A model generated the notes under the pieces. That model worked only from the letters and a program-made list of their open reading frames with translations, was not told the origin of the DNA and did not search any database. The position numbers were made by a program, and so were the translations under genes. From contig NC_085844.1 of the NCBI RefSeq assembly GCF_035594765.1, forward strand, positions 218,194,107 to 218,258,106: a DNA stretch of 64,000 nt, written 5' to 3'. Of the stretch, positions 13,201 to 45,300 are shown piece by piece; position 1 is the first letter of the stretch; every line of letters begins with the position of its first letter. This stretch comes from Anolis carolinensis (taxonomy: Eukaryota).

Positions 13201-13580
13201 CAGGCCTTTGGTTAAGATCGCCCATCCCCATTATAATCATAATTATATTCCTCGACCTTTTATGTTGGTCGCACTTCTCCTGGTTAATTGATATTGGCTC
13301 AGGCCTCCTCTCTTCCCAGATTGACCTCAAATGAACTTGTAGCACTTTATCTAAGTTTTAATCCGCAACTTATACTGTGCACTTTGCTAATCTACTATTA
13401 CGGCCTCACTGTTTCTAATAAGTTTTTTTAAAAAAAATTCTGGTTAGTGTGTAAATGCTATTACTGGTGCATGCTATTGTTTGTTGATTTATTGTATATT
13501 GTTATTGTTTTTGTATCTGATATTTCTGTGAGCCGTCCAGAGTCCCCTTTGGGGGAGATGGAGGCGGGATACAAATTAAC

Positions 13581-13627
<47 letters not shown>

Positions 13628-14211
13628 GCCCTTGGAGAAGGAGGAGGAGTTTGGGAGTCCTTGGTGAAGATCAGAGGATGCTGGTGCACTTGACATGGAG
13701 GGAGGAGGGACCGGGGAGGAAGAGGGCTGAGAGGCAGGAAGGGGAGGAGGAGGAGGAGGAGGGGAGGAGAGGGCTGGAGGAAGGGGAGGAGGAGGGTGGC
13801 CTTGGCTGCAGGGGAGCCTGCACCGCGGAAGGGTCCTGGGCAGGTGCCAGGCGCTTCTAGGGCGGGATGACGCAGGAAGGGGCATCCAAGGGAGAAGACG
13901 CTCCGAGGGAGGAGGATGGATGCATGGGTGGATGGAGGGAGGATGGAGGCAGGCAGGCAGGCAAGCGGGTGTCCCTCCTTCCCGCTCTCACCGGTCTCCT
14001 GCTCCCCGAGGAAGGCGTCCTCCTCCTTGCGGGAGCGGAGGCAGCTCTCCGAGCCTCCTCCTCCCGCCACCGCCGCCTCCTCCTCGGGCAGCCGGGGGAA
14101 GCTGGTGATGCTCATGTAATCCACGGGGGAATAGGCGCCCAGGCTGCTCTGCTGGCTCGCCTCCTTCTCCGCCGCCGCAGCCGCCGCCGCAGCTGCTGCC
14201 GTGCTCGCCAT
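421..14211 (-). CDS. GGT7: Glutathione hydrolase 7 / gamma-glutamyltransferase 7, 5' part; join(14211..13992, 2489..2263, 572..421); the gene continues beyond the left edge
   Basis: Spliced translation MASTAAAAAAAAAAEKEASQQSSLGAYSPVDYMSITSFPRLPEE...FLGEQETD|PDSFLKSARLQRLPSSSSEMGSQDGSP...LTFATGVTVALIMQIYFGDPQ|IFHQGAVVTDAARCTALGIEVLNKQGSSVDAAIASALCSGILNPHTAGLGG matches mammalian GGT7. All junctions are GT-AG and phase-consistent (1, 0, 2). Confidence 0.97.
1195..1243. repeat. (AAT)n microsatellite; similar tracts at 13581-13626, 27889-27931, 36038-36099, 56571-56627
   Basis: Direct reading; mostly L2 tails. Confidence 0.95.
2263..2489 (-). CDS. GGT7: GGT7 coding exon 2 (includes the type II transmembrane anchor)
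   Basis: aag|ACCCCGAT...CCTCAG|gtaag; encodes DPDSFLKSARLQRLP...VIITACLTFATGVTVALIMQIYFGDPQ. Confidence 0.96.
3324..3646. mobile_element. Tc1/mariner-type MITE (other copies 21791-22098, ~34098-34411, 41627-41914, 61060-61382)
   Basis: TIR CAGTAGAGTCTCRCTTATCCAAC with TA TSD. Confidence 0.9.
5467..5733 (-). mobile_element. Poly(A)-tailed tRNA-derived SINE (second family; other copies at ~1-46 +, 10943-11207 -, 51305-51540 -, 59795-60048 +, 61898-62155 -, 63035-63270 +)
   Basis: B-box GGTTCGAATCCC, shared body ...GAGAAGCCTCCCACAAGGATGG...CTCCTGACACG(A)n. Confidence 0.88.
7799..8721. mobile_element. Non-autonomous hAT element interrupted by an L2 tail (~8245-8520); related copy at 63429-63863
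   Basis: TIR CAGTAATTCCCAACCT / AGGTTGGGAACTACTG; perfect 8-bp TSD AGTAAGAT at 7791-7798 and 8722-8729. Confidence 0.9.
9916..10131. mobile_element. Palindromic MITE family (Harbinger-like ends G(G)TGCATCTACAC); other copies ~19755-19970, 28870-29070, 50581-50790, 58760-58975
   Basis: GTGCATCTACACTATAGAATTAATGCAGTTTGACAC...TCAAACTGCATTAA...ATGCACC. Confidence 0.75.
12203..12818 (+). mobile_element. CR1 LINE 3' fragment
   Basis: LGCINRSIVSRSKEIMLPLYSALIRPHLEYCIQFW RT C-terminus; (ATTCTATG)n-type tail. Confidence 0.93.
13105..13626 (+). mobile_element. L2 LINE 3' fragment with (TTA)n tail
   Basis: LWNSLPRETRQAPTLMAFRKSLKTWLFTQAF; 3' stem GAGTCCCC..GGGGAGATGGAGGCGGGATACAAAT; related tails at ~1245, 8250, 24290, 35990, 43530, 52120, 55900, 59180. 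Confidence 0.88.
13992..14211 (-). CDS. GGT7: GGT7 coding exon 1 (with poly-Ala tract)
   Basis: ATG at 14211; LGAYSPVDYMSITSFPRLPE motif; donor G|gtgag at 13992/13991. Confidence 0.95.
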
Positions 14212-14229: not shown

Positions 14230-14345
14230 AAGCCAAGGCAGGCAGGCAGGCAAGCAAGGAGGCAAAGGAAATGACGTCAAGGGGAGGCCCCACGGAGCAG
14301 GTGTTTGATGGAAGGGGCGGGGCAAGGGAAAGGGGCGGGGGCCTC
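14230..14345 (-). promoter_or_regulatory. GGT7 proximal promoter within a CpG-rich region: perfect CRE with abutting ETS-like core, plus two GC boxes
   Basis: GGAAATGACGTCA with palindromic TGACGTCA at 14272-14279; GGGGCGGGG at ~14314 and ~14332; 60-130 bp upstream of the ATG. Confidence 0.65.
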
Positions 14346-14459
14346 ACCTGTTGCCCCTTTAAAAAAGGGAGCAGCTCCCACTCTGTTGGAAATAACTCTT
14401 CCTATGGATGCGAGAGCTGGACCATAAGAAAGGCTGAGAGAAGGAAGATAGATGCTTTT

Positions 14460-15495
14460 GCGGGCTGTGGCGCAGGCTGGTAAACTGCTGCTGCTGCTGC
14501 AATAAATCACTCTGACCATGAGGTCATGAGTTCGAGGCCAGCCGGTGGCGGGGTGAGCACCCGTCAATTAAAAATAAAATATAGCCCCTGCTCCTTGCTG
14601 ACCTAGCAACCCGAAAGATAGTTGCATCTATCCAGTAGGAAATAAGGTACCACTTATAACAGTGGGGAGGCAAGTTTAACTCATTTACAACGTTGGAATG
14701 AGGAAGTGAGGAAGTGCCATCAGAGTGGATGATGAAGCAGCTGCTCCCCCCTGTGGCCAGAATTGAACATCCCCTCAGGAGAAGGTTAAATTGCCTCTGC
14801 GTCTGTCTGTCTGTTGTCTCTGTCTCGGTTTGATGTGTTTATGGGCATTGAATGTTTGCCCTATATGTACATAATGTGATCCTCCCTGAGTCCCCTTCGG
14901 GGTGAGAAGGGCGGAATACAGGGCCGGCCGGAGATATTTTTTAATGTGAAGCGGGGGTGCTGAAAAGCGCCCCCGCCACCGGCCCCGCCTCCCGCGCCCT
15001 GGCCCCGCCCAGCGTGCCCTGGCCCCGCCTCCCATGCTGCGTGGGAGGCGGGGCCAGGGCGAATAGTGAGGGGGGCGGGGCCAGAGTTGGCCCCGCCCCC
15101 CGCCCAGCGTGCCCTGGCCCCGCCTCCCACGCAGCGTGGGAGGCGGGGCCAGGGCACGCTGGGCGGGGGGCGGGGCCAGAGCTGGCCCCGCCTCCCACGC
15201 TACACCCGCTCGCCCGTCTGGCCTTTTCTAGCTGGCCAGACTGCAGCGGAGGTCCCTGCAGGCTGCGATTGCGGCCTGCAGGGACCTCCGCTGCAGTCTG
15301 GCCAGCTAGAAAAGGCCAGACGGGCCAGGGCGCACTGGGCGGGAGGCGGGGCACCGTCAGGGCGGTGCCCCGCCTCCCGCCCAGCCTGACGGCGCCCCCC
15401 CGGGCCTGCGCCCGAGGCGGCGGCGTCAGGTGCCTCAATAGTGGGGCCGGCCCTGGCGGAATATAAATACTGTTAATAATAATAATAAATAATAA
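14460..15495 (+). mobile_element. tRNA-derived SINE with an L2-type 3' tail (Anolis SINE2-like), itself interrupted by a hAT MITE
   Basis: A-box TGGCGCAGGCTGG, B-box GAGTTCGAGGCC; 3' CCCTGAGTCCCCTTCGGGGTGAGAAGGGCGGAATA...(AAT)n. Confidence 0.75.
14919..15455. mobile_element. Young GC-rich non-autonomous hAT element (MITE)
   Basis: TIRs CAGGGCCGGCC / GGCCGGCCCTG; perfect 8-bp TSD GCGGAATA at 14911-14918 and 15456-15463. Confidence 0.92.
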
Positions 15496-15600
15496 CTTTA
15501 GTGCTGGAGGAAAATCCTGAGACAGCCTTGGACCGCAAGGAGATCCAGCCAGTCCATCCTCCAGGAAATAATGCCCGGCTACTCACTGGAAGGAAGGATA

Positions 15601-16019
15601 GGGTAAAGGTTTTCCCCTGACGTTAAGTCCAGCCGTGACCGACTCTGGGGGTTGGTGCTCATCTCCATTTCTAATAATAAATAATAAAATAATAATAAAA
15701 CTTTATTTATACCCCGCTGCCATCTCCCCGTGGGGACTCGGGGTGGCTTACATAGAACAAAAGATAGGCAACATAATACAAATCACACTATAAAAAGATA
15801 AAATAGTAATGCAATATATCAATTAAAACAAAAATACAGGATAAAAAATGCATTTAAAACACATAAATGGTAAGCCAAAGTAGCCGGCGTTGTCCGTAGA
15901 CACACCTCCAAGGTCATGTGGCCGGCATGACTGCATAGAGTGCCGTTACCTTCCCACCGGAACGGTACCTATTGATTCACTCACATTTGTATGTTTTCGA
16001 ACTGCTAGGTTTGTCAGGA
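15601..16019 (-). mobile_element. 5'-truncated Sauria SINE interrupted by an L2 3' tail (~15675-15870)
   Basis: Sauria tail GGTAAAGGTTTTCCCCTGACGTTAAGTCC; TSD GGAAGGAAGGATA (15588-15600) / GGAGGGAAGGATA (16020-16032). Confidence 0.88.
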
Positions 16020-21107: not shown

Positions 21108-21204
21108 GTATCAGTTTAGGAGAAACCAAAACTGCAGTCTATCACAGTGTGGTACAGAAGATCTATGAGGCAGAATCAAAACATCTTTCCTCCTAAGGTA
21201 AAGG
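21108..21204 (+). other. Candidate upstream exon of the CYLD-like gene; ATG at 21165 would add MRQNQNIFPPKVKGAIPA in frame
   Basis: Acceptor gtacag|, consensus donor AGG|gtaagt at 21204/21205; the phase-1 join to 23362 keeps the frame; in-frame TAG upstream of the ATG; weak Kozak context. Confidence 0.4.
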
Positions 21205-22681: not shown

Positions 22682-22990
22682 AAGGTAAAGGTAAAGGTTT
22701 CCCCTAACGTTAAGTCCAGTCGTGACCGACTCTGGGGGTTGGTGCTCATCTCCATTTCTAAGCCGAAGAGCTGGCATTGTCCATAGACATCTACAGGTCA
22801 TGTGGCCGGCATGACTCCATGGAGCACCGTTACCTTCCCGCCGGAGCGGTACCTATTAATCTACTCACATTTGCATGTTTTCGAACTGCTAGGGGCTAAC
22901 AGCAGGTGCTCATTCCGCTCCCAGGATTTGAACTGGCACCTTTTGGTCCGCAAGTTCAGCAGCTCAGCGCTTTAACACACTGTGCCACCA
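22682..22990 (-). mobile_element. Sauria SINE
   Basis: (AAAGGT)n tail, full body, flanked by repeated AAGCAACATAA. Confidence 0.92.
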
Positions 22991-23375
22991 TAAGCAACAT
23001 AAGATACCACAAAAACAATTACAGTTTTCAGCTATGAACACAAAACACATAGGTACACAAAAAAATTAAGTTGATGTCCAACTTCCTTGTAATTGGTTTA
23101 CATGTAGTATTAACTATTTTTCTTACATGCCTACAGAAAAAATACTATGTATTTCTACTAATAATCTAAGGAAAAAACAGACAATTAATTCTCAAAACCT
23201 GCCAGTGTTTTCTCATCTCTCCAACAGGAGTTTCTTCTGTAGTGAATCTTTAGACATGAGACACCAACAAGATTCTAGCTGGTGCAAACTTGTTATCTCT
23301 TGTTTTAGCTTTTTAAAGCCTTGAAGCAACCTTTTTTGACCACAATTTTCTGTATTTACAGGTGCCATTCCAGCC

Positions 23376-23789
23376 ATGCAGTTTGCAGCTGAGAAAAAAG
23401 AGGCTTTTATTGTCACTCGAGAGATCCATGCAGGCCGAAAGAAGATCCCTTTGGGATGTATAGGTTACTTTCTGGAGGACAAACACAGCATGGGTCGCAT
23501 TGTTGACCTGAAATCAAGGCCTGTCATAACCCTGATGAGTAGTCACATCAAACCTCTCAGCTGTCATGAAGCTGGACTCTTACTCACTGTTGAGAGCCCA
23601 CAAAAAAGGCATGACCTGCTTTCCAACGAGCGGCTTTTCTCTGCTATTTGCTGCCTGCAAATCTATGATGTGGTGCGTGTGAGATACAATAGAGTGGTGG
23701 CAGTCGGCATTGTGAGAAGCTTCTGGGAACAGCACAGGAAGCCTGGCAATGGAGAGCTGAAGATGCTCCTTATTGAGGTGGAGCTGCTG
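23376..23789 (+). CDS. CYLD-like exon A (N-terminal region plus first half of a degenerate CAP-Gly fold)
   Basis: Acceptor ttacag|G at 23362; GCCATG at 23376; ends IEVELL|gtgag, equivalent to CYLD FGVELL. Confidence 0.85.
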
Positions 23790-26700
23790 GTGAGGCCTCA
23801 ACAGACTGGTTTAACAATATTCTGGATGCTATGCTGATATAATTGTAGTACATTGTATCATATACATGTCTATTCAGAAACAAATCCCATCAACTTCAAT
23901 ACAGTTTATGCCCAAGTAATAGGGGATAGCTCTATAGATTTAATGACTAATTAATACAGAGCACAAGCCTTAACATTTCTTACTCCTGCCCACCCCAAGT
24001 TAAATATCTGTAACTCACCCTGGGACCAAATTCAAATTTGAGAAAGGTCCTGAAGACCACATTTCCCCTGTGGGTGAAGATAAGGGCACTGGGTAGGACA
24101 GAGCAATATACCTGATCGCCCCCCCATTTCATCCATTACTGGTGATGTTTGTTTTATACCATTTTATTTTGCTATTATTGTGCTTACTGTATTATTGTGT
24201 TTTTAATCTGTTTTATTTTCTATTTTGCTGATATTGTTTACTTATGTTTTAATTCTGCTTATGTTTTGTTTCTGGGCTTGTATCCATGTTAGCCGCCCCA
24301 AGTCCCTTCAGGGAAATGGAGGTGGGATAGAAAAATAAAGTATTATTATTATTACATTTCTTACCAATGTGTTACTGGTTGTTTCTATAACTGAGGATAC
24401 AATACATATGTCAGTTATGTGTATGTTTATTGAGGGGTGAGCATCAGTACAACAGCCTTCTGGACAGCAAAAAATTGTATGTGTGTAGCATTGCAGCTTC
24501 TTCATATCTGCACTCTTGTTTTGTAAGTTATGATCACTGTTATTAATTTTGTAATATAATTTGGAAAAGTAGAATTGCTTCTAAGCTTAGTCAGTATTAT
24601 CATACAGCAACAGTATAGATTTTAAAGAATTAATTGCAAAACATGCCTGCTTAATCCTTCTTTTCTTTGTTTCTCAAACTGCATCAGGATTCAGGGATTA
24701 TTTCCCTCCGTGACCGCTATTCTAGACTGAAGGTTGATGCAAGCAAGATCATTGCTGTTAGCTCCAATGTTACACATTCCATTGGATGCCAAGAGATCAG
24801 CCAAGAATCTTACAAGAAAGGTGAGAGCCAGTGAGGAGTGTGAGTAGAGGGCTACCTCCTTTCCCTAGCTCCTGATATTTTCAATTTTTACAATATTTAC
24901 AACATAAATCTTCATCTTAAAGATAACTGTATTCTCATTAATTTTGAGGCTAGTAAGGTCATCCTTTGTGTTGATGCAACTTTAGCATGTCAGAAATGGC
25001 TGCCCAAACAACACAAGGAACTCCCACAAATCTCTTCCAGTAACAGAGAATGTTATAGTGCAACTATAGGACTCCATACCAGTATATTGTCCCCCTGTAA
25101 CAAAGATCATTTATTAATTTAAGTAAGTTTCTCAGGGCTCTTTCTAGCTTTATGACTCATATTAACTGCTATGGCAATATTTGGTGGAATCCTGGGATAT
25201 GCAATTTTGGGAATGATATTTAGAAAAGCAAGATGAAGGCAAATGCAACCTCTCTCTGAACAGATCGTGTCAGGAAACCCCATGATAGGGTTGCCATAAA
25301 TCAGAAATAATTTGAAGGCCCACAACAACAATTTAGAAAGATAGGGCTGATAAAAGAACCCACTGCCTGATACATTTACAAATTATTCTTCCAGAGAACA
25401 ATCACCCGAACCAATACTTGGCAGAAGTCAGTGCTGCATCAGTCTGGGAACAGGAAGTCCTCAAGAAGATGGAAGGCACTATGAGGGGCATCCAGGGGCA
25501 CTGCAACTCCTGCTACCTAGACACAACTCTCTTCAGGTGTGCCAAGTGTCCGTGGAAGATGGTGTCTAGTTCTGCAATTTCTTGTTTATTACACAATATT
25601 TTTTTTGGATCTCAGGAAAACAATTTCTCCCACCTAATTAATAATGGCCAATTGGACAAGGCTGCTAGAAGTCCTCTGGAGGATGTTATTATCTGAAGTT
25701 AACCCAATGGTTAGACCAGCTGCAACCAGCTTACAGCAGTATGCGATTGTCATTTTAAACTTCATGGAAGCTATGAGCATATTTCATATTTCAGCTGATT
25801 GGTTTATCATGTGTTATGTGTTTTTTCCATTGCAGTTTATTCAGTTTCTCCTCTGCCTTGGATGGCATCCTGTATTCTACTGAGGTGGATGACAAAACAG
25901 CACAGCAAATCCTGAGAGAGCAGATTGTGCAGCCTTTGAGACAGTGAGTTTCATCATTTCATCATTTCTCTGTGGCCCTAACTCTTATGACAAGATTTGG
26001 TTTTCATGTTTTCAATGTTATTTCTTACTTACAAGCTCAATGATATGGCTATTGACTGACAGTGGAAAACCTTTTGTGGAGAAAAATACTATCTTATTCA
26101 AAGCATGGACACGCTTGTTGTTCTGGGCTACTGCTTTCAGAATCTCAGGTCCCTTCCACACAACTGAATAAAATCCCACATTATCTGCTTTAAACTGGAA
26201 AATATAGCAGTGTGGATTTGGATAACCCAGTTCAAAGTAGATATTGTGGGGTTTTCTGCCTTGATATTCTGGGTTGTCTGTTTGGAAGGGCCCCCAGTGG
26301 CCGTGCTGTCTGGAGTTGTGATTCAGACTATAATTTTTCAAAGATTTTAATTGTTTTGATATACTAGAGCAGTGGTAGAAAGAAGATAGATTGGAGGATA
26401 GATGAGACAGTCAACTTCTAAGCGTTTTGCCATAGATGAGCAAGAGTTTCTGAACTCAAGTGGCAATTTTCATAGAGATAATTTTTGTAGTCCAAACAAC
26501 TGCCTGTTCTCTCAGTTTTTTTTTAAACATATCAGCCTACTCTTCCAGCTCTGCAAGGCATGTACTTGCAAAATCATGCCCAGACACTGCACTCTCCACT
26601 CTTCCTATGACTAAATCCTAAACTGTGAGCAAGTAGGAATGGCCTGTACTCTTAGTTGATCTGGATTATCTACTAACTGGCATTCGCTGTACCTTACCTA

Positions 26701-27886
26701 TTAAGTATGCATGGGAATAACAACTGCCATAAATCTCTCGAATCTTCATAGACATGGTTATGTGGGAGCCAATGAAGTGATGAACTTGAGGAAATTGCTG
26801 AGATGCGACAGTTTTATTACAGAAGAAAAAGGTGAGTGATAGTGGCATGATACCGTATTTAACAAGGGACAGCTCTTGTCAAGCTTGATCTCCTAGATTC
26901 TTTTCCAAACCACCCCTTTTCCCCCTTCACCACCAATCTTATTCTATCTTTATGAAAGCTAGGAAAATATACTGTTTGGGTCTGTAGCTCCCACAGTCCC
27001 TAAACCAGCATAAGCAATGTACATATGTTTGTGCATTTTTGTGCATGTCCATTTTTCAAATTTTGGGAATATATTGGGGTTTCTTGGCATTTTTCAACAT
27101 TATCGAGCATTGTTTTCTTATGTGAAGCACACTGCAAATTGAGAGACCTGATGCAAATTTTCAATCAAAATCTTTGTTTGATTTTACATCTGAGTGCAAA
27201 TCTCAGAGAAAACTAATTTCTAACTAGTTGTATTATGGTAATTGCATCATATGCAGTGCTTAGTTCTCTACCTTTCCTTAAAAATACAGATCCATTGTGC
27301 AAATACTTTAAAATATCTGCAGAATATATCCACAGCAGAGGAGTAGGCAGATGATAAATGCTCAAAGAGTATTTCAGCATATTATGCTCTTCTAATGGCT
27401 ATTCTGTTTTATAGACCCAGAAGAATTCTTGAATGCCCTTCTAGGAGAAGTCTTGGCTGTAGAACCCTTGCTCAAAATCAGGTAAGAGTTCATCATGGTG
27501 AGGGATGCTAACATTTGAGAATGGTGAATTCTAGTTCTCAATTCTGCTACTTGTGGTGAAACTCAGAGCAGACAGAGAAGTGTAGCCAAGAGGGGAGTGC
27601 AAGAGGGGAGTCTAGCTGCTGTAATTAGAATATGGTAAATCCAATCTGTGGCAACCTATAAGAAACAAGTCTATATTTGTCAGTCAGTTGGTAACCCAAC
27701 TCATGGTTGCCCAGTGTCAGCAAAAGGCAAAGCCAAGCCCTGGAACCCACAGATTTGCCTTAATTAGTAAAATGAGCAATGGGTGGCTCCAGTATTTTGC
27801 TGTCTCCTTGGAATGTCTGTGCATGCGTGTGATCATTTCTATAGAGGCAGCCCTATATACATCTCCTCAAAGTTGTTGCTATTATT

Positions 27887-27931
<45 letters not shown>

Positions 27932-30900
27932 TCACCTTACCCCCCAAAATTGGGATCCACAATTGCTTACAGCTATATATCAGACTGGAGCCCCCAGTGG
28001 CGCAGTGTGTTAAAGCACTGAGCTGCTGAACTTGCAGACCAAAAGGTCGCAGGTTCAAATCCAGGGAGCGGAGTGAGCGCCTGCTGTTAGCTCCAGCTTC
28101 TGCCAACCTAGCAGTTTGAAAACATGCAAATGTGAGTAGATCAATAGTTACCGCTCTGGCAGGAAGTTAACAGCACTCCATGCAGTCATGCCGGCCAAAT
28201 GACCTTGGAGGCATCAATGGACAAAGCCAGCTCTTTGGTTTAGAAATGGAGATGAGCACCAACCCCCAGAATTGGACACGACTGGAGATAATGTCAGGGG
28301 AAACCTTTACCTATGCCAGACTAGAGCTCCCATCATTCCCTCAGATTGGACAATTGCTAGGCATGCTCGGTTGATGAGCATTTTAATCCAGTATATGTGG
28401 AAGGTACTGATTTAAAGTTGCCTGTTGCCTTATGGCAAACCTATGAATTTCATAGTGTTTTCTTACATAAGGAATACTCAGAAGTGGTTTTGCCAGTTCC
28501 TTCTTGTTGCCAATCTCCCATCTAAATGCTAACCAGGGCTGAACCTTGATTTGCTTCCTTGATCAGCTGGAATCAGCTGCCTTTAGAATATTTAGGTAGG
28601 TAAAATACATGCTTTTGAACAACTTTCCTATTCCTTCTTCTCTGGAAAAATGTAGAGCAGACAATGAAGTCCTCAAGTATAATTGCTATCAGATCCTTGC
28701 AGAGAACAATGCAACGGTTAAAGTACCTACTGTGCAGCAACTCCTGGAGCAGTCTCTACTCTCCTACGGTCTACATCTGAATGAGGTACACAGTGACTGC
28801 AGACAACATTGTGCATATTTGTGCTAGGGATTACCCCTTCCTGATTTGAGTGAAATGCCCTTTCTGAGGATGCATCTAAACTATAAAGTTAATGCAGTTT
28901 GATTGTAGTTTAACTTTCATAACTCAGTGTTATGAAATCCTGGGATGAGGTACCAGTCCCCTTTGGCAGAGTAGGTTAAAGACCTGGTAAAATTTCAAGT
29001 CCCATATCATAGAGCCAGGGAAGTTAAACTGGTCTCAAAGTGCATTAATTCTATAGTGTATGTGCACCTTCTGTCTTTTTTCAGTCAATTCTTTCCAGAG
29101 ATCAAGGAAGATGATGGGCTAGAAAAGTATGCAGTGGGAAAATAGAGTCATGGGGAAGGGAGACTTACAGAGATTCCTTGCACTCATGTTGGGAATAAAC
29201 GGAGCTTGGAAAAAATTCTTTTTGGAGTTGTTGTTCTCAGATTTCCTCTGAGAGATTCTGGATGCTGTAGTAAAAAAAATGTAACGATTCCAAGCTCTGG
29301 GAATGATGACTAACCTAAGGCTTCGAGAACAGTATGTAGTAATGTTTCATTGTAACATTCAAAATACTTTATAATGTTTCATTTTATTTGATCTGATGAT
29401 ATTCCTTTGGTTGCCATTAATCTCAACCCACATACAGAAAATGGAAGGTCAGATATAATGGTTGTCTGTGGATGTTCCGTAGATGACCTGCTATTTGAAC
29501 GCAAATCACTATTTCATTATTATTTAATAGCTACGGGCAATGATGTAGATGCTGTTGGACACGAACTCTCATAGGCCTCAGCCAGGGAATACTATGGGGA
29601 GATGGGAGGTGCAGTCAAACAGATAAAATCTATTAAGATCCATAGACCCCCACAATTTTTCAAACTAGATGTCTTTATTTTTGATATTTTAAACATCTCA
29701 AAACACAGATAACTTTTAATTTTTATATTTTGTCCTGAGCCAACTGCTTTAGCATGCCTAAAACACTTTTAAAGAGAGACACTTCTATTCCAGATTCCTT
29801 CGTGCTTCATCCTACAGATGCCTAGATTTGGAAAGACATATAAGAAGTTTTCGCTGGTGTATCCTTCTCTGCATCTTGACCTCACAGACTTGGTAAACCA
29901 AGGTAAAGAAGTCCAAAAACTAGTTACATTTTTGATGTTGTTCCCATCTGCAAATTTATAATGGTTACTATCACTTTCCTCTGATTTTACAAATAATGAA
30001 GATTTTCTGGGTGTTTAGGAAGTGAGGATAAAGTAACATGCAGAAGTGATATCTATGGAGTTACAACACAGAATGAAATGTTTGTTCAGCAGTGAACAAT
30101 AGTAAACTAGATGCCCTCTAAATATTAGACTACAGCATCATTCATACACAGCAGAATAGATAAGTCATTTACAGTGGGCAAGGCTGGGAGGTGCCTGATC
30201 ATGGAAGGTGAGTATTTTGTCTCACTTACAAATATGGAAGCTGTAGAGTACTAGGCCTCTGTCACTAGATAGATGTTTTAAAGTCCTTTTTAGTATCACA
30301 ACCAAGTATTGACAGCTATCCAGTGGTGTGAAAGGAATGAGACAGATGTTTCCATTTTTAAGAAAGAACCTAATATTAACCCTAAATTCTTCTTATTTGT
30401 AGCTTCTCCTGTGTGTTGTGTATGTGGTGGGAAGACTTCATATGGATGTTCATGGTGCCAGCCTGACACCCGCCTGCACCCAGAATACATGAAATTATTT
30501 GGGAACATTTCTAAGGTAGGGGCAAGGAAATAATATCAGTGGGATTAGAGGAGAAAATATTGCTACCAGACCTCGGGGAGGGGGCAGTTCAATGTTTTCT
30601 TTGAGTAGGTAAAGGTAAAGGTTTCCCCTGACGTTAAGTCCAGTCATGTCTGACTCTGGGGGTTGGTGCTCATCTCCATTTCTAAGCCGAAGAGCTGGCA
30701 TTGTCCGTAGACACCTCCAAGATCATGTCGCCGGCATGACTGCATGGAGCGCCGTTACCTTCCCGCCAGAGCGGTACCTATTGATCTACTCACATTGGCA
30801 TGTTTTCGAACGGCTAGGTTGGCAGTAGCTGGAGCTAACAGCGGGCGCTCACTCTGCTCCCGGGGTTTGAACCTGGAACCTTTCGGTCTGCAAGTTTAGT

Positions 30901-33028
30901 AGGCTCAGTGCTTTAACACATTTTGCCACCTTTGAGTGGTAGTCTATATATTTGGCTAGCCAAAGCTACATTTGGACAGATTGATAGCTGTCTTAGGGAA
31001 TCTGCAGCATACTTGTTAGGTGTTCTGACTGCTGATATAACAACAGAAAGCAAAACTAAAACACCACCACCAAGTCTCTACTATGACTGGACACATTGAC
31101 TGCTAATCTCTTAGCCTCTATTTTTTTTACCTGTGAAACAGCAATATTAGTTTGTTGCTTTTGATAAACTATCCATGCATCTCTCTAGCCACTTTGAGTT
31201 TTGCAGTAGAATCCCTGTTCCATAATAACTGAAACATAGTTTTCAGTGCAGTAAATAAATAACTCCAAGCCTTCCACACCACTCTCTCTAATTAATGAGT
31301 ATCATGTTTTTAAGAAAGAAAGAAAGAAAGACAGTAGACTTTGCAAGTCCAAGGCCTGCTCAGCCTGACCTGTGAAGAATTTATCAAATCCTTAGCTATT
31401 GGTCTGGCTTTTCTTTTGGAAATGTGACAAATTGATTTCAATTGGCAACGAAAGTCTTTTTCCACAGCTTCATATTTTGCATATCCTCCTACCTTCCCAG
31501 AAACATAATGATATGAATGCACAGAAACCACCCAATTTTTACTGCTGGGAAATCTAAATTATATCTAAACAGATCAGCTTTCCAGAGTCTAAATTGGACA
31601 CAGGACATTCAGATTATCTCAGACAAAAACACATGTCTCTGAGACAAAGATTTCCAGTTACAGTGCAAAGGCAGCCATAGGAATTTGTAAAGACCAAAGG
31701 AGGCTGAAACTACCAGAGCTGGCCAGCATGAATTGGAAGTGATAATGCTTCACTTAATTTCTCAAAATCAGAGAAGTTGGACTGTTTTCAGTATTTTGGT
31801 AGTGGAAACACTGTAAGAGGTGCCAGGGTTCTGCTAACAGAATTTGAACAAAGAGCAGAAGGAACACTGAACCCAATGTCATTGTGCTAAGCACTGGCTC
31901 AAACAATCAGAATTAAACTCTTTCTTCCTTAAACATAATTACCGTATCTAGATATTTTAATATTTAGTATTGCCAATTGAACAAGCTAATTATAAAGCAA
32001 CTGAATAGAAATCAGCAGGCTAAAATAGTATGAAAATCAAGCTATGGTTATCCCAAAAGCTTGGGTGAAGAGACAAGTTTTAACTTGAATTGAATTGAGA
32101 GTAGCATCAACATAAACCAGGCCTTCAAATGAAACCCTTCTTCAGGGGATTTGACACCTGTTCACAGCTGAAAAAAGTTTCCACGAGTGGTACAGCTTTC
32201 TTCAATGGGCATGACAGTATTGGATAAAACTCAAAGATTTTGATATATTCTATTGTCATAGAGAGAAAGAGACAGGATTAGGATTGTAATCACTGTTTAT
32301 TTCACCCAGGCACATTCTCCTTTGACCAGACTGAAGCATTCTGGTAAAGAACTGAAATCCAACAGCCCTTCTGCTAAGCAGCCCACACTGGATTTGTTTG
32401 CAGTTCTCTGCATTGAGAAGAGCCATTATGTTGCTTTTGTAAGATATGGCCCATCTCAAACATCCTGGCTTTTCTTTGACAGCATGGCTGGCACACTGAG
32501 TAAGGAAAACTTTTGGTACTTATTTATCCAGTTATTTAAATGAAATACGTTACAAAACTAAGTGTAAAAGACAAACAATATGTCAAAGATGTTATTTCCA
32601 AAATAAGCTATTAGAGAGTATCAACTGGAAAATTTAGGATGCTAAGATGTGTTAAGGAAAGTACTTGATCAAATATAAGTCAGATGTATGCCTATTTGGA
32701 CCCCATAGCTACAAAACAAACCAGATAGCATACTTAAGTCATACATGAACACAACTTGACAGTTGTTTTATTGCCAATTATAGCATACTTTTGTTTCCCT
32801 TTTCAAAATTGTTCTTAATGTCCTTGCTCTTATTTTTCTTTAGAGAATGAGAAACAAACAAATATCCCTGTGGTAAAAGCCTGCCCTCAGATTGGACACT
32901 ATTTGGCTATGTCACCAACAGAATTTGCCACTGTTGATACTAACCAGATGGACAAGCTTTCCAGAAGATTCTTTTGTGACGCTTACACATTCATGTACCA
33001 AGAACCAAAACACAGCTCTTACAAATAG
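23376..33028 (+). CDS. CYLD-like USP-family deubiquitinase, compact paralogue, 556 aa; join(23376..23789, 24688..24820, 25395..25536, 25836..25943, 26752..26831, 27415..27481, 28656..28785, 29794..29902, 30403..30515, 32310..32499, 32844..33028)
   Basis: The 11 GT-AG exons splice into one open frame of 1671 nt. Motifs [16 protein letters not shown] (Cys box), [41 protein letters not shown] (His box), WLFFDSMA (Asp), CDAY and C-terminal YK* are diagnostic of the CYLD USP domain. Too short and diverged to be CYLD itself. Confidence 0.93.
24688..24820 (+). CDS. CYLD-like exon B (linker)
   Basis: catcag|GAT...AAAG|gtgag, phase 0 to 1, open: [44 protein letters not shown]. Confidence 0.75.
25395..25536 (+). 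CDS. CYLD-like exon C (catalytic Cys box)
   Basis: [21 protein letters not shown]; ccag|AG ... AG|gtgtg. Confidence 0.93.
25836..25943 (+). CDS. CYLD-like exon D
   Basis: [36 protein letters not shown]; tgcag| ... CA|gtgag. Confidence 0.92.
26752..26831 (+). CDS. CYLD-like exon E
   Basis: [27 protein letters not shown]; catag| ... G|gtgag. Confidence 0.92.
27415..27481 (+). CDS. CYLD-like exon F
   Basis: [22 protein letters not shown]; atag| ... AG|gtaag. Confidence 0.94.
27987..28313 (+). mobile_element. Sauria SINE
   Basis: GGAGCCCCCAGTGGCGCAGTGTGTTAAAGC...GGGGAAACCTTTACC. Confidence 0.92.
28656..28785 (+). CDS. CYLD-like exon G
   Basis: [44 protein letters not shown]; gtag| ... GAG|gtac. 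Confidence 0.92.
29794..29902 (+). CDS. CYLD-like exon H
   Basis: [36 protein letters not shown]; ccag| ... G|gtaaa. Confidence 0.94.
30403..30515 (+). CDS. CYLD-like exon I (B-box-derived Cys cluster)
   Basis: [38 protein letters not shown]; gtag| ... AAG|gtagg. Confidence 0.9.
30608..30930 (-). mobile_element. Sauria SINE
   Basis: Same family as 22682 and 27987. Confidence 0.92.
32310..32499 (+). CDS. CYLD-like exon J (catalytic His and Asp)
   Basis: [10 protein letters not shown]...[37 protein letters not shown]; ccag| ... A|gtaag. Confidence 0.94.
32844..33028 (+). CDS. CYLD-like last coding exon
   Basis: [61 protein letters not shown]; TAG at 33026-33028. Confidence 0.93.
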
Positions 33029-39258: not shown

Positions 39259-39300
39259 TCAATCATAATGGATGGCAGTGTAGAAGATTATCCAAACAAC
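39259..39300 (-). CDS. RAB5IF: RAB5IF exon 4 (coding part)
   Basis: ttttcag|GTT...YTAIHYD TGA. Confidence 0.95.
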   Translation of the reverse strand, partial: VVWIIFYTAIHYD

Positions 39301-42300
39301 CTGAAAAAAAAAACCCACAAGAAAGGATATCAGCAAGAGACCAATGACTAGACACATCAGCTACCAAATTCAGACTGAACAGACTTTTTGAATACTAGCA
39401 TAATCAATAGCGATCAACATTTAAGAAGAGCCCATTTGAAACCCTAATCTAAGTTAGAAAGAGTGGAACAGTGTAGACTAATCCCTCTCCACCAGTTTCT
39501 GTAATATGCCGCACATACAAAAACTCAGGGCAAAAGAGATGGAATACCTGGATTGTGTTGTTTTATTTATGAACAAAGTAAAAGGGGATATTTAAAACTA
39601 CACAGAGCTATCCAAGTTTAGGGATTAGCTTTTGTTTTAATAACATGTGAAACATCTTCTAGTTTCAATTATCTTAATGTTGTATTTTCAGTCAAACCAG
39701 CTAGTGAAGTTTTTCTTGCTTACTTTTGAATTGTAGACCAAGAATGGCATTTTGAAACCAATGTTGGTGCCAATAGGAAACCAAAAGGAAAAAAAGGGAG
39801 AAGACTAAGTTGGGTTTTTATATGTAGGTAGATTTTGTTATTGGGGGATAGTGGTGGTAATAGAGAAACAATCAGTCTCAAGTCTCTCTCTCGCACACCT
39901 TCTTCAATAAGATGTTGTACAGAGAATGAAAGATTTTACAGTTTGATCAATGAGAAAGACACTTCAGTCCTCCAAATGTTTTTAGTTTCCAATCACTATA
40001 ATTCCCTGCCACTGATCATTCTAGTTGGGAATGGGGAATGAAGTATTTAGTGAACAAAAGTTAACATTAACTTTGGGATGGCAGCAGGGACCACAAAATC
40101 ACCTTGTAGTGTTTTCCCAGATAAAGATTTTTATATATCTTGGACCTCTTAAGTCTAAATGCATGGTGACAACACTCTATAAAAATTAGAATAATTACCA
40201 AAAACAGTGCAAAAGATGTCACAAATCCTTCCTTTGTTAGCTCCCATGTTCCACCATATTCTTCTTCATCTATCTGCTGAAAGCTACTAAAATAAAGGTA
40301 CAGCACTCCAGCATTTATAAGACAGAATCTGTGGAGGTGAGTAAAAAATTATATCAGAATGTGTTATCAGTTATTTCTCATTTATTTACATCCTGCCTTT
40401 CTCCAAAGATGGGGTTCAAGGCAATGTATAACAATTTAAAGAGATCAAACTAAAGTATTTACAAAAGCTGAAAAATGATAACAAAATATTATTTTTAAAC
40501 ATATCCAAACAGTTGAAAACACGTAAAATAATTTCAAAAACACAATTTCCAGTAAAGACTACACAAAAAAATTTCAACTACCAATAGAAAGAAAGCAGCA
40601 AGGGGGCCAAGAGTTCCGCGGCATGGGAGCAGCCAGAGAAAGCTGTCTCCCAAGTCCTCACCAATTATAACTATGAAGGTTGTGGGATTGAGAAAAAGGA
40701 CTCCTTACCAAACTTAAAGCTTACACTGGCTTATATGAGGAAATAGTGTATTTCAGATAGTCTGAACCAAGCCATGTAAGGCTTTAAAGGTAAAAAAAGT
40801 AGCACAGTACTTTGAATTCTGCATGGAAACAGACTGGGAACCAATGGATGTGTTTCCACAGGGGAGACACATGAACCTAGCCCCAGTCCGCAGCAGCACT
40901 TTGGACCTACTGACATTTTAAACTACTTTTTGATTTAAATCAAAAGCTCTTCTTTTGCTCTAGAAACTTTCAGAGTATTTGTGAGTGTGTCTTGTCTGTT
41001 TGCATTATCTTCGACTTCTTTTTATTCTCTCTACAAAGAAATCAAAAACAAATCTTTGTTTTTTACCACAAATTGAAGTTCTGCAGAACTGCAGACTCAC
41101 AATTTAGGAGCTGCTGACACACATCAATGTATAATGCAAATTACATGAGAATTTAATGTCAATATTGAGAGACACACTCAATTTATGACAACTATTTCAA
41201 CTTCAACCTGCATCAACCTTTCAGTGTTTAATAGAAAACAAAGAGGAGAACAACAAAAACAACTTACATTGCTATGCCCACAAATCCCTTCAATGGAACA
41301 ATGCCCCAGATCACTCCCAAAATAACAGCAATGATCTGCCGGAACCAGTAAATCACATCTAGAAATTCATCCTGCAGAAAGGAGGCAAAATAAAAGTTCA
41401 GAAGATCCATAATTCATAGGCAACATATTTGGCAAAATGCCATTTGTGATAACAGGAAATCTGGACTCTGTTCCTTTGTTCAACCTGGAAGCATTTGAGA
41501 GAATGGTTTCTGATGCACAACTCTAAAAGATGGAAAGAAGCAGAAAAGGGAACAGAAGCAGGGAGTGAGAGGTATCACTACTGTAAACTGAGATGTAACT
41601 TTGTACTTTCTAAATATGTATGTGTACAGTAGAGTCTCACTTATCCAACATTCTGGATTATCCAATGCATTTTTGTAGTCAATGTTTTCAACACATCATG
41701 ATATTTTGGTGTTAAATTAGTAAATACAGTAATTACTACATAGCATTATTGCACATTGAACTACTTATTATGTCACATTTGTTGTTAAACATGATGCTTT
41801 GGTGCTTAATTTGTAAAATCATAACCTTTTCCTTAATCCTTCCTTATTATCCAACATATTCGCTTATCCAACATTCTGCCGGCCCATTTATGTTGGATAA
41901 GTGAGACTCTACTGTATTTCAATATTGTTGTGCATCTTCCATTTGTTTCTGACTTATGATGATTCTAACACAGATTTTTTCTTGGCAAGACTTGTTCAGA
42001 AGGCTGAAACTGTGACTTGCACAAGGTCACCCAGTGGGGTTCAGTGGCCGAGCAGGAATTTGAATGCCAGTTTTCAGAATTGTAGTCCAAGGCTCAAATA
42101 CTATATCATGTTGGTTCTTGTGTATTTTAATACTTCTGTCCAAAGCTCTCTCAATAAGCTTTTAAAAAATCTCTGAGGCTGACATCGAGACAGTCCAATG
42201 CAGTCTGTCTCTCAGACTGATAGCCAATGTGGAATTCTGCTATCCAGGTTCAAAACTAATCACTATATCACACTGTCTTTCATAGATAAGTGGGCTGATC

Positions 42301-45300
42301 AAGCAGATCAATTTTTCTTAGCCCTGATAACGACTGTCCAAATTACCACAAGAAAAATACTATTATACAGTTCAGTTTGTAACAATTTAGGCTTATATAG
42401 TGTAGATCTTAGGGGGAACACCTTCTACATTATTCTGTGTCTAATACAGTGGTTCTCAATCTGTGGGTCCCCAGATGTTTTTGGCCTTCAACTCCCAGAA
42501 ATCCTAACAACTGGTAAACTGGCTGGGATTTCTGGTAGTTGTAGGCCAAAACACCTGGGAACCCATAAGTTGAGAACCACTGGTCTAAAAAAAGCCTAGA
42601 TACTTTGGTCACATGCAATGAGAAAAAAATCACAAAAATATTGATATACAGTGTTCCCTCACTTATCCAAATTACGTTCCAGGACCACCCAGTATAACTG
42701 AAAATCCACAAAGTAGGGACACTATTTTAATTTTAACATTTATACATTATATTGAAACCTTTCCTACCAGCGCCGGTGGGCCCCTTGCTCCATGCCCGCC
42801 ATGTTGCTCTGGCTGCCTCTGCTCCTGCAGCTAGGGAAGAAGGAAGGCCGCTCCGCCCGGTAAGTGAGCGAGTGAGAGAGTGGGTGAGAGTGTGAGGGCG
42901 GGCGGCAGCAGCAGCTGGAGCCTGGAAGAGGAGGCCAAGCTCCTGTTTCTGTCGCCGCTCCAGCTGGTCACACCGGGAAACATGGAAGACTCGGTAGAGG
43001 GGACGGAGTCTTACTGTATCCCCAAGGGCTAGCAACGTAACTGAACCCTCACTCTCTCACCCTCCCTCCCTCGCTCGCTCACTTACCGGGCAAAGCAGCC
43101 TTCCTTCTTCCCTGGCTGCAGGAGCCGAGGCAGCCAGAGCAACATGGCAGACACGAAGCAAGGGGGCAGCAACGGAGGAAATAAATAAAATATTTTCCTG
43201 TGAAACAATAAGCGAACCGCAAAGTAGCGAGGGAACACTGCAAAAATAAAAACATACAACACAACCCCCTTCCCCCATCCAGTCATCATACCTTTACTGA
43301 CAATTATAGACAGTGCAAACATCAAACATTGTCACTGTGTCTAAATAAGAAATACTATTTTATTATTTGTTTTAATCTCTGATAATTTTTAAACCAACAT
43401 CTGGTTATATACAGAGGGCAAAGCTTGGGTATGTTACACTGCAAAATATTCTACTTTCTTTGAGAGGATCTTACTATGTTCTGCACATTTATTGAACTGT
43501 TGAACACATTTATTTGAATTGTTGCCAATTTGTACGCCGCCCTGAGTCCCTTCGGGTGAGAAGGGCGGGATATAAATGTTGTAAATAAATAAATAAACTC
43601 AATTATCACCATAATATTTTAACATCTTCCTGAATGTAATCCAGTCCCATTTTTCTTTCTGATCTTACTTTCAAGTATTTTAGTGATTTACAATGATTAG
43701 TAAAGCATTGTAACATTTATCAAAGGCTGTTCAACAAGGCCACAGTATCATCAGAACAAAGATCCAGTCTCTCTCAGAGGTTGTGAGGTGTTGGAAACTA
43801 GGCAAGTGGGCTTTATCTATCTGTGGAATGTCCAGGGTGGGCGAAAGACCTCTTGTCTGCCTGAAGAAAGTGTGAATATGGCAATTGGCCAGCTTGGTTA
43901 GCATTGAATAATCTGGCAGCTTCAAAGTCTGTCTGTCTCCTGAAGGGGAGTCCTTTGTAGGGAGATGTTAGCTGGCCCTGATTGTTTCTTGTCTAATCAA
44001 GCCGGCCTATTGCTACATTCACACTTGCCTCAGGCAGACAAGAGTTCTTTCTCCCACCCTGAACATTCCACAGATATAAAAACCCCAGTTGTCTAGATCC
44101 CAACAGACTTCATAACCTCTGAGGATGCTTACCACAGATGTGGGCGAAATGTCAGGAGAGAATGCTTCTAGAACATAGCCATACAGCCCGGAAAATTCAC
44201 AGCAACCCAGTGATTCTGGTCATGAAAGCCTCCGACAATGCATAAATAAAATTGTTGTTGTTGTTATTATTATTATTATTAAGGCAGCCACAAGTAGGTC
44301 TAGCTCAGCTCAAACTCTGGTCTTGCAGGTGCTTTGGACTTCAGCTCCCAGAATCCTTCATCACTGACCCAAAAAGCTGAGGCTGCTGGGAGTTGAAGTC
44401 CAAAACATGAGGAGAATTTAGCCCAGCTTTTCCCTCTGATCTACCAGGTTTTTTGGACTTCAGTTCCCAGGATCCCTCTTCATTGGCTGAGGCAGCTGAG
44501 GCTGCTGGGAGTTAGAACAAAAAAAAACTCTAAAGGGAACCCACTGAAATGCAAAGATACAGAATGGGGGACGCTTGGCTCGACAGCAATACATGTGAAA
44601 AAGATCTTGGGGTCCTTGTGGACAAGTTAAACATGATCCAACAATGTGATGCGGCAGCTTAAAAAGCCAATGGGATTTTGGCCTGCATAAATAGGAGTAC
44701 AGTATCCAGATCTAGGAAAGTCATGCTACCCTTCTATTCTGCCTTGGACAGATGACACCTGGAATCACACTGTGTCCAATTCTGGGCAATGTAATTTAAG
44801 GGAGATATTGACAAGCTGGAATGTGTCCAGAGGAGGGCGACTAAAATGATCAAGGGTCTGGAGGACAAGCCCTATGAGGAGCGGCTTAAAGAGCTAGGCA
44901 TGTTTAGCCTGGAGAGGGAAGGCTGAGAGGAGACATGATGGCCATGTATAAATATGTGAGGGAAAGTCATAGGGAGGAGGGCACAGGCTTGTTTTCTGCT
45001 ACCCTGGAGACTAGGACACGGAACAACCTCTGGCTGGATGGCCATCTGTCGGGGTGCTTTGAATGCGATTTCCTGCTTGTTGGCAGGGGGTTGGACTGGA
45101 TGGCCCACAAGGTCTCTTCCAACTCTATGATTCTACTGAGAGAAATGTGGAAGGCCTGAATGCCTCCACTGTCAGACATGGGCCCTCCAGGTGTTTTGGA
45201 CTCCAACTCCCACAATTCCTACCAGCCTACCGACTGTTAGGAATTGTGGGAGTTAGAATCCAAAACACCCGGAGGGCCCAAGTTTGCCCAGGCCTGTTCC

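What the first reader, a model, noticed from the sequence alone, without database searches (positions are those of the whole stretch)
23376..33028. Intact 'mini-CYLD': a compact CYLD paralogue with a complete catalytic triad but almost none of the regulatory half
Seen: 11 exons splice without frameshift or stop into 556 aa, with Cys (GHCNSCYLD), His (EKSHYVAF) and Asp (FFDSMA). Only about 200 aa precede the USP domain, and the two introns there (898 and 574 bp) leave no room for the missing part. Known: human CYLD is 956 aa with three CAP-Gly domains, a TRAF2-binding PVQES motif and an IKK-phosphorylated Ser cluster, and it removes K63/M1 chains in NF-kB and necroptosis signalling; humans have no second CYLD gene beside GGT7 or RAB5IF. 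Inference: this is a separate, probably active K63/M1-type deubiquitinase that lacks CAP-Gly2/3, the TRAF2 site and phospho-control, so it must be targeted differently. It may be an ancient duplicate retained in squamates and lost in mammals. CYLD-like duplicates are annotated in fish, so automated annotation may already list it, but I know of no functional description.
Basis: partly seen in the sequence, partly recalled or inferred. Interest (0 to 1): 0.88.

Follow-up and report, generated by a model that had tools for sequence, protein, structure and literature searches.

The report
Anole CYLD-like (CYLDL) deubiquitinase gene
This is a real, intact and selectively maintained lizard gene for a short relative of the tumour-suppressor enzyme CYLD, but it is already annotated and is the known "CYLD-like" duplicate that mammals lost, so it is sound rather than new.

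Summary
All 11 exons, their GT/AG sites, the 898- and 574-bp introns, the 556 codons and the Cys/His/Asp triad are as described. That gives 574 aa, identical to Anolis carolinensis RefSeq XP_062834881.1 / UniProt G1KVR8.

The gene is CYLDL, the whole-genome-duplication twin of CYLD, already reported as deleted in all mammals (Vlasschaert 2017, PMC5381560). Orthologues lie between a GGT gene and RAB5IF from elephant shark to frog to lizards.

- Fish, shark and lungfish proteins (about 670-775 aa) carry one CAP-Gly domain, the CAP-Gly3 type.
- Amphibian and lizard proteins (about 550-580 aa) lack exactly the two exons that encode it (327 nt in shark, in frame).
- All lizards sampled have also lost one CxxC zinc-ligand pair of the B-box.
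- The leucine that human CYLD needs to bind SPATA2 is not conserved.
- Lizard pN/pS is 0.25-0.31, so the gene is under purifying selection.

Catalytic activity, linkage preference and targeting remain inferred. No RNA reads could be obtained, and no canonical vertebrate CYLD sequences were retrieved for a joint tree.

The parts
21165..21204 (+).
   Evidence: Its translation MRQNQNIFPPKVK(G) matches the N-terminus of P0132/P0178. Donor is GT. The joined product is identical to P0178.
23362..23789 (+). Encodes the N-terminal SH3-like barrel, a helical linker and the first half of a degenerate CAP-Gly1.
   Evidence: hhalign against the invertebrate CYLD N-terminus gives probability 95.9%, E 6e-9. 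The model has pLDDT about 90 over residues 30-140.
24688..24820 (+). Exon 3 (133 nt). Encodes the end of the second barrel and the linker. Same size as shark exon 2.
24821..25394 (+). 574-bp intron at the position where sharks and fishes have the two exons for the linker and CAP-Gly3
   Evidence: Exon maps. No CAP-Gly remnant.
25395..25536 (+). Exon 4. USP start with catalytic Cys240 ([12 protein letters not shown]).
   Evidence: PDB 2vhf hit.
25836..25943 (+). Exon 5 (USP). Holds Tyr261 at the position of human Leu622.
26752..26831 (+). Exon 6 (USP)
27415..27481 (+). Exon 7 (USP, DPEEFL block)
   Evidence: Invariant E309-F315 in alignment A2.
28656..28785 (+). Exon 8 (USP)
   Evidence: PDB 2vhf hit.
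29794..29902 (+). Exon 9 (USP, QMPRFGK). Donor at 29903, phase 1.
30403..30515 (+). Exon 10. First half of the B-box. CxxC...CxxC is kept; the next CxxC is replaced by GNIS.
32310..32499 (+). Exon 11. Rest of the B-box, His489 and Asp507. Left out in RefSeq isoforms X2 and X3.
   Evidence: PDB 3wxf/2vhf hits.
32844..33028 (+). Exon 12. USP C-terminus and stop codon.
11165..14211 (-). 3' neighbour on the opposite strand: a gamma-glutamyltranspeptidase gene (GGT7-like, 676 aa). It runs on to the left.
   Evidence: Gene call with PF01019 in L001. Coordinates.
39259..43028 (-). Downstream neighbour: a RAB5IF-like gene (144 aa, PF07019). It runs on to the right.
   Evidence: coordinates.

Best explanation
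The locus is the Anolis carolinensis orthologue of CYLDL. CYLDL is the ohnologue of the deubiquitinase CYLD that arose in the early vertebrate genome duplications and was lost in mammals.

Shown here:
- It is an intact 12-coding-exon gene encoding 574 aa, identical to the RefSeq/UniProt protein.
- It is under purifying selection.
- It has a CYLD-type USP domain with the complete Cys-His-Asp triad.
- It has an N-terminal module of two small beta-barrels, homologous to the CYLD N-terminus plus the first half of CAP-Gly1.
- The short architecture arose once, in the tetrapod stem, by loss of exactly the two exons that encode the linker and the CAP-Gly3-type domain still present in sharks, ray-finned fishes and lungfish.
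- The lizards sampled additionally lost one CxxC zinc-ligand pair of the B-box.

Inferred, about 60% likely:
- The protein is an active thiol deubiquitinase with a CYLD-like preference for Met1- and Lys63-linked chains.
- It lacks the ubiquitin-binding CAP-Gly3, the TRAF2 motif, the IKK phospho-sites and the Leu622-type SPATA2 contact, and has a weakened B-box (the dimerisation module in human CYLD). It is therefore probably not recruited through SPATA2-LUBAC or TRAF2. Its conserved N-terminal double barrel would instead direct it to partners not yet known.
For: Identity:
- The spliced product equals P0178, which the sources name CYLD / CYLD-like.

Family:
- P0178 against human CYLD USP 2vhf scores 309 bits over residues 225-574.
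- The full-length model matches the CYLD USP structures 3wxf/3wxg at TMt 0.90, rmsd 2.1-2.8 A, E 1e-33. The next USP (USP14) scores 4e-9.

Paralogy:
- The order GGT / CYLDL / RAB5IF holds in two Anolis species, Pogona, Podarcis, Xenopus and Callorhinchus. Paroedura shows RAB5IF only.
- Danio CYLDL against zebrafish CYLD scores 302 bits; amphioxus CYLD against the same chain scores 349 bits.
- PMC5381560 names CYLDL as a WGD duplicate deleted in mammals.

Clade:
- Vertebrate CYLDL has support 100, the tetrapod short forms 99, the squamates 100.

Exon loss:
- Shark and Danio have 13 exons; frog and lizards have 11 core exons.
- The missing pair is 327 nt in shark and 408 nt in Danio, both in frame.
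- Pfam CAP_GLY is found only in the long forms. It matches CYLD CAP-Gly3 structures 1ixd/7owc.

Selection:
- pN/pS is 0.25-0.31, with Fisher p from 6e-8 to 1e-50.
- Between the two Anolis species the CDS is 94.6% identical against 82.6% for alignable intron.

Residues:
- The triad and the zebrafish E674 equivalent are conserved across the family. One full-length frog sequence has Asn at the Asp position.
- The B-box CxxC loss is lizard-wide in the sample.
- The Leu622 equivalent is Tyr, Asp or His. Leu622 and the B-box are required for SPATA2 binding in human CYLD (PMC5031558).
Against: - No RNA evidence for the Anolis junctions could be obtained here.
- No enzymatic data exist for any CYLDL, as far as the paper searches show.
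- No canonical vertebrate CYLD sequences were retrieved, so the CYLD/CYLDL split is not shown on one tree here.
- The presence of canonical CYLD elsewhere in the Anolis genome rests on general knowledge and on the literature, not on a test here.
- The B-box region is modelled with pLDDT below 50, so its state is unknown.
- The N-terminal half evolves faster (pN/pS about 0.47 between the two Anolis species).
Confidence: 0.9

Rival explanations
1. It is an active CYLD-type protease whose linkage preference or substrates have shifted away from Met1/Lys63 chains. The loss of CAP-Gly3, the altered B-box and the long squamate stem branch would mark neofunctionalisation.
For: The squamate stem branch is long, 0.45 changes per column. 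Only 42-46% identity to the CYLD USP structures. An extra Cys sits two residues before the catalytic Cys in most lizards. In human CYLD, CAP-Gly3 ubiquitin binding matters for function (PMC8511506).
Against: The USP core superposes on CYLD-diubiquitin complexes at TMt 0.90. Blocks such as EEKDPEEF, including the E674 equivalent, are invariant across CYLD and CYLDL. In human CYLD, B-box deletion does not change catalysis or specificity (PMC5031558).
Confidence: 0.2
2. It is a decaying or non-functional leftover: transcribed perhaps, but no longer needed, on its way to the loss seen in mammals.
For: The gene was lost in mammals. No bird, turtle, crocodilian or snake protein appears among the best 120 hits of two searches. 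One zinc site is lost. Older RefSeq isoforms skip the His/Asp exon.
Against: The frame and all splice sites are intact in at least five lizards mapped exactly. pN/pS is 0.25-0.31 with p down to 1e-50. The triad is kept in every full-length lizard sequence. Exons are far more conserved than introns.
Confidence: 0.04
3. It is the fast-evolving true orthologue of CYLD, relocated, and Anolis has no other CYLD.
For: The newest RefSeq name for the Anolis protein is simply 'CYLD'.
Against: The same GGT/RAB5IF neighbourhood holds the gene in shark, frog and lizards. The clade coexists with canonical CYLD in Danio, indirectly shown. Many species carry it under 'CYLD-like', a name given beside a CYLD. 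PMC5381560 treats it as a duplicate.
Confidence: 0.02
4. It works mainly without catalysis, as a ubiquitin-chain binder or decoy. For example, the isoforms lacking His/Asp could compete with CYLD for partners.
For: Isoforms X2 and X3 end after residue 450 and lack His489/Asp507.
Against: The triad and the catalytic-cleft blocks are conserved under purifying selection in the USP half (pN/pS about 0.2). The isoforms are computed models without read support shown here.
Confidence: 0.05

Closest known systems
CYLDL / 'CYLD-like' (ohnologue of CYLD; Vlasschaert et al. 2017, Genome Biol Evol 9:558, PMC5381560; RefSeq 'ubiquitin carboxyl-terminal hydrolase CYLD-like' in amphibians, lizards, fishes)
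   Same: This is that gene. It is identical to the Anolis RefSeq/UniProt entry, lies in the same clade and has the same GGT/RAB5IF neighbours from shark to lizard.
   Different: Nothing differs at the level of identity. What I did not find described in the papers read are the tetrapod loss of the two CAP-Gly3 exons and the squamate loss of a B-box zinc-ligand pair.
Human CYLD (956 aa; USP structure 2VHF; zebrafish CYLD-diubiquitin complexes 3WXE/F/G)
   Same: USP fold with a truncated-fingers CYLD shape (TMt 0.90), the Cys-His-Asp triad, a B-box insertion at the same place, and a homologous N-terminal region.
   Different: No Pfam-detectable CAP-Gly. CAP-Gly2 and CAP-Gly3 are absent and CAP-Gly1 is reduced to a barrel without the GKNDG-type loop. 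There is no PxQE TRAF2 motif and no phospho-site region. One B-box CxxC pair is missing. Leu622 is replaced by Tyr. The chromosomal neighbourhood is different.
Fish, shark and lungfish CYLDL (about 670-775 aa)
   Same: Orthologous. Same N-terminal module, same USP exon sizes (80, 67, 130/133, 109 nt ...), same neighbours in Callorhinchus.
   Different: They keep two further exons encoding a CAP-Gly3-type domain (Pfam E 1e-13 to 1e-14; matches 1IXD/7OWC) and a complete eight-ligand B-box.

Membership tests
CYLD-type USP deubiquitinases | USP (papain-like) catalytic domain with the Cys, His, Asp triad | tested here: met
   Pfam UCH is above its cut-off (25.0 vs 23.9 bits). Cys240, His489 and Asp507 align to human C601, H871 and D889.
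CYLD-type USP deubiquitinases | Closer in sequence and fold to the CYLD USP than to any other USP | tested here: met
   2vhf scores 309 bits and only CYLD chains are hit. Foldseek gives 3wxf/3wxg/2vhf at E 1e-33 against 4e-9 for the next USP.
CYLD-type USP deubiquitinases | B-box zinc finger inserted in the USP domain with four ligand pairs (two zinc sites) | tested here: not met
   The insertion is present. But the third pair (human C817/C820) is G..S in Anolis and is absent in all 10 lizard sequences that cover it, while present in amphibians, fishes and invertebrates. The region is modelled at pLDDT below 50.
CYLD-type USP deubiquitinases | CAP-Gly domains N-terminal to the USP domain | tested here: not met
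   No CAP_GLY hit in P0178 at E up to 0.1, against E 1e-13 to 1e-14 in fish, shark and lungfish CYLDL. Only a remnant of CAP-Gly1 is seen by profile comparison; 1whl reaches Z 5.3.
CYLD-type USP deubiquitinases | Hydrolysis of Met1- and Lys63-linked ubiquitin chains | not testable with these tools
   Needs recombinant protein and a di-ubiquitin panel.
CYLDL (CYLD-like ohnologue) | Falls in the vertebrate CYLDL clade, apart from invertebrate CYLD | tested here: met
   Tree of 40 proteins: the CYLDL clade has support 100, and Anolis sits inside squamates (100) and inside tetrapods (99).
CYLDL (CYLD-like ohnologue) | Conserved position between a GGT gene and RAB5IF | tested here: met
CYLDL (CYLD-like ohnologue) | Coexists with a canonical CYLD in the same genome | tested here: inconclusive
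   Indirect only. Danio CYLDL is 302 bits from zebrafish CYLD 3wxe, further than amphioxus CYLD at 349 bits. Canonical Anolis CYLD was not retrieved, and the only note holding 'CYLD' in this scan is on this same stretch.
Canonical CYLD orthologue | Three CAP-Gly domains, a TRAF2-binding PVQES motif, a phospho-site region, about 950 aa | tested here: not met
   The protein is 574 aa, has no CAP_GLY hit, no [PSAT]xQE motif, and the whole region is missing in the alignment.

The most novel reading that the evidence does not exclude
Tetrapod CYLDL would be a natural 'separation-of-function' CYLD. It keeps the Met1/Lys63-type catalytic core. It shed the ubiquitin-binding CAP-Gly3 by a clean two-exon loss in the tetrapod stem. 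In squamates it also lost one B-box zinc site. It never carried the SPATA2-contact leucine. It would then act as a monomeric, SPATA2/LUBAC- and TRAF2-independent deubiquitinase, steered by its conserved N-terminal double barrel to an unknown partner. That would be a branch of NF-kB/cell-death ubiquitin editing present in lizards and amphibians and absent from mammals.
Probability: 0.3. Interest if true: 0.5.

Novelty: already known. Interest (0 to 1): 0.28.

Why it matters
CYLD is a central brake on NF-kB, necroptosis and LUBAC signalling. Its regulation is understood through the very parts this protein lacks: CAP-Gly3, the phospho-sites, the B-box dimer and SPATA2.

A selectively maintained twin that keeps only the catalytic core and the N-terminal module is a ready-made comparison for asking what those parts are for. 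It also shows that non-mammalian vertebrates have one more CYLD-type enzyme than the mouse and human models suggest.

The gene itself is already annotated and named in the literature. The value here lies in the refined gene model, the dated two-exon loss, the squamate B-box change and the evidence of constraint, not in a discovery.

Tried and rejected
- Exon-by-exon Pfam scans gave nothing meaningful; the pieces are too short.
- Exon 1 alone, and the N-terminal profile, found no solved structure by sequence.
- Foldseek on the N-terminal model gave no hit at E up to 0.001. VIA-align gave only generic SH3/Tudor-like barrels (best Z 6.8), with CYLD CAP-Gly1 (1whl) at Z 5.3, not distinctive.
- A Logan fragment from a lacertid (P0189) covers exon 1 only and so does not show splicing.
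- All three homologous-protein searches listed only CYLDL or invertebrate CYLD among their best 120. No canonical vertebrate CYLD id was obtained, and no CYLD+CYLDL tree was built.
- The paper's supplements are not held.
- The Atlas search was uninformative.
- A search for CAP-Gly exon remnants in the introns was negative.
- The absence of snakes, turtles, crocodilians and birds from the hit lists is only suggestive. Some annotated lizards are also missing from those lists.
- I did not send my own joined spliced model to any search tool. The exons were searched singly by reference. The joining was done only inside a script to check the frame and to compare with database proteins. After that, the identical database protein P0178 was used by its id.
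Full report
**Observation**

I rebuilt the gene model from the raw sequence. They sum to 556 codons and a stop. The two introns ahead of the USP domain are 898 and 574 bp, as stated. The motifs [17 protein letters not shown] and FFDSMA are present.

Single exons, searched by reference, hit only CYLD USP structures in the PDB (2vhf, 3wxe/f/g). Exon-wise Pfam scans were uninformative.

**Identity**

A whole-library HMMER search with exon 1 found a 553-aa caecilian protein named 'CYLD-like' and a gecko fragment. Searching from that protein and from the Anolis sagrei orthologue gave a large family:

- Proteins of about 550-590 aa in frogs, a salamander, caecilians and lizards.
- Proteins of about 670-775 aa with a Pfam CAP-Gly domain in sharks, rays, chimaera, lungfish and ray-finned fishes.

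tblastn of these proteins on the window showed that the Anolis proteins start in an extra upstream exon. With exon 21165-21204 spliced to 23362, the 12 coding exons give 574 aa. This product is letter-for-letter identical to P0178, which is XP_062834881.1 / XP_008108218.1 / UniProt G1KVR8 of Anolis carolinensis. The window is identical to assembly GCA_035594765.1.

I did not send my own joined model to any search tool. The joining was done only in a script, and P0178 was used by id afterwards.

**Known in the literature**

Vlasschaert et al. 2017 (PMC5381560) list a CYLD duplicate, 'CYLD-like' or CYLDL, among the whole-genome-duplication ohnologues. [quoted passage not shown] I found no functional study of it.

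**Paralogue, not orthologue**

- The gene lies between a gamma-glutamyltranspeptidase gene (minus strand) and a RAB5IF-type gene (PF07019, minus strand) in A. carolinensis, A. sagrei, Pogona, Podarcis, Xenopus laevis and the elephant shark. In Paroedura only RAB5IF is within reach.
- In a zebrafish relative the neighbour is a TOP1-like gene.
- The Danio member of the clade scores 302 bits against zebrafish's own CYLD USP (3wxe). Amphioxus CYLD scores 349 bits against the same chain. The clade is therefore a separate, faster-evolving copy.
- I could not retrieve canonical vertebrate CYLD sequences: the three capped searches listed only CYLDL or invertebrate CYLDs. A joint tree is missing.
- A tree of 33 CYLDL proteins and 7 invertebrate CYLDs follows the species tree. 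Support is 100 for vertebrate CYLDL, 99 for tetrapods and 100 for squamates, which sit on a long stem.

**How the short form arose**

I mapped exons exactly against eight genomic loci.

| Species | Exon lengths (nt) |
|---|---|
| Elephant shark, 13 exons | 435, 133, 158, 169, 145, 114, 80, 67, 130, 109, 119, 205, 176 |
| Xenopus, 11 exons | shark exons 3 and 4 absent |
| Lizards, 11 core exons | shark exons 3 and 4 absent |

- Shark exons 3 and 4 total 327 nt. The Danio pair totals 408 nt. Both are multiples of three.
- These exons encode the linker and the CAP-Gly domain, which matches CYLD CAP-Gly3 structures 1ixd/7owc.
- Lungfish still has the domain, so one in-frame two-exon loss in the tetrapod stem explains the 'mini' form.
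- The 574-bp Anolis intron at that position holds no recognisable remnant.
- No CYLDL, long or short, has CAP-Gly2.
- P0178 has no PxQE-type motif.

**The N-terminal 200 residues**

A profile of this region aligns to the N-terminus of invertebrate CYLDs through the first half of CAP-Gly1, with hhalign probability 95.9% and E 6e-9. The match stops at the 'VELLD' strand, where the GKxxDG loop would follow.

The AlphaFold model has mean pLDDT 80. It shows two small SH3-like barrels (residues 25-80 and 101-183) joined by helices. Structure searches give only generic barrel matches, best Z 6.8. Human CYLD CAP-Gly1 (1whl) reaches Z 5.3. I read this as a degenerate CAP-Gly1 module. Its function is unknown.

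**The USP domain**

- P0178 aligns to human CYLD 583-956 at 309 bits.
- The full-length model superposes on the zebrafish CYLD-diubiquitin complexes at TMt 0.90 and rmsd 2.1-2.8 A, far ahead of other USPs.
- Cys, His and Asp are kept in every full-length CYLDL sequence examined, except one frog that has Asn for Asp. Blocks such as EEKDPEEF are invariant across CYLD and CYLDL.
- The third B-box zinc-ligand pair (human C817/C820) is replaced in all 10 lizard sequences that cover it, geckos included. It is intact in amphibians, fishes and invertebrates. This agrees with the earlier scan note s1-637229.
- The B-box is modelled with pLDDT below 50.
- Human Leu622 is needed for SPATA2 binding, as is the B-box dimer (Elliott et al. 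2016, PMC5031558). In CYLDL that position is Tyr in most lizards, Asp in two geckos and mostly His elsewhere. The dimer-interface Ile790 is Val.

**Constraint**

- Among five lizards pN/pS is 0.25-0.31, with one-sided Fisher p from 6e-8 to 1e-50.
- Between the two Anolis species it is about 0.2 in the USP half and about 0.47 in the N-terminal half.
- Between the same two species the CDS is 94.6% identical, against 82.6% for alignable intron sequence.
- This refutes decay.

**Expression**

Complete orthologous coding sequences on 2.2-2.7 kb Logan contigs in a frog and in cartilaginous fishes can only be spliced mRNAs. They say nothing about the lizard.

**Mechanism**

Shown: an intact, constrained CYLD-type catalytic core with a stripped regulatory half.

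Inferred, about 60%: an active Met1/Lys63-type deubiquitinase. It is not coupled to SPATA2-LUBAC or TRAF2, is not helped by CAP-Gly3 ubiquitin binding, and is possibly monomeric in lizards. Its N-terminal double barrel would direct it to partners.

Rivals are a shift in specificity (0.2), a mainly non-catalytic role (0.05), decay (0.04) and a relocated orthologue (0.02).

**Distribution beyond this**

No bird, turtle, crocodilian, snake or mammal protein appeared among the best 120 hits of either search. That fits further losses. But some annotated lizards are also missing from those lists, so this is a lead, not a result.

**Verdict**

The gene is already annotated and named in the literature. 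The modest additions are the corrected start, the dated two-exon loss, the squamate B-box change, the non-conserved SPATA2 contact and the selection test. Interest is low to moderate.

Noticed in passing
window 22683-22893, 28023-28317, 30607-30902: Three copies of an interspersed element of about 300 nt, 87-94% alike, lie in introns of the gene. Two are direct and one is inverted. It is probably a SINE-type repeat of the anole genome.
   Followed up: partly
window about 27880-27960: A trinucleotide (AAT-type) microsatellite in the intron between exons 27415-27481 and 28656-28785. It reads as a poly-Asn ORF.
   Followed up: no
window 30516-32309 and 32310-32499: Older RefSeq isoforms X2 (P0180, 476 aa) and X3 (P0132, 460 aa) diverge after residue 450. 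They leave out the exon with His489/Asp507, so they would be catalytically dead. X3 joins exon 30403-30515 directly to 32844 out of frame.
   Followed up: partly
window 11165-14211 (minus strand) and 12000-16000: A GGT7-like gene (676 aa, PF01019) ends here with a G+C-rich stretch (0.49-0.58), probably its CpG-island promoter. A second G+C-rich stretch at 44000-46000 lies just beyond the RAB5IF-like gene (39259-43028+).
   Followed up: partly
P0154, P0196, P0197 (Patiria miniata), P0198, P0199, P0203, P0207, P0219 (other echinoderms), P0235 (a coral): Echinoderm and coral CYLD-type USP proteins carry Death domains (PF00531) fused to the CYLD USP, mostly together with CAP-Gly. Vertebrate CYLD and CYLDL do not show this architecture.
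   Followed up: no
window 52228-53328: Another first-stage note (s1-637092) reports a ZC3H11A-SH3PXD2A chimeric retrocopy with an open 366-codon frame downstream of this gene. I did not examine it.
   Followed up: no
P0051 (Coryphaenoides rupestris, 920 aa): This fish 'hypothetical protein' has two USP stretches and two CAP-Gly stretches and scores far above its identity level. It looks like a tandem duplicate or a fused gene model of CYLDL.
   Followed up: no
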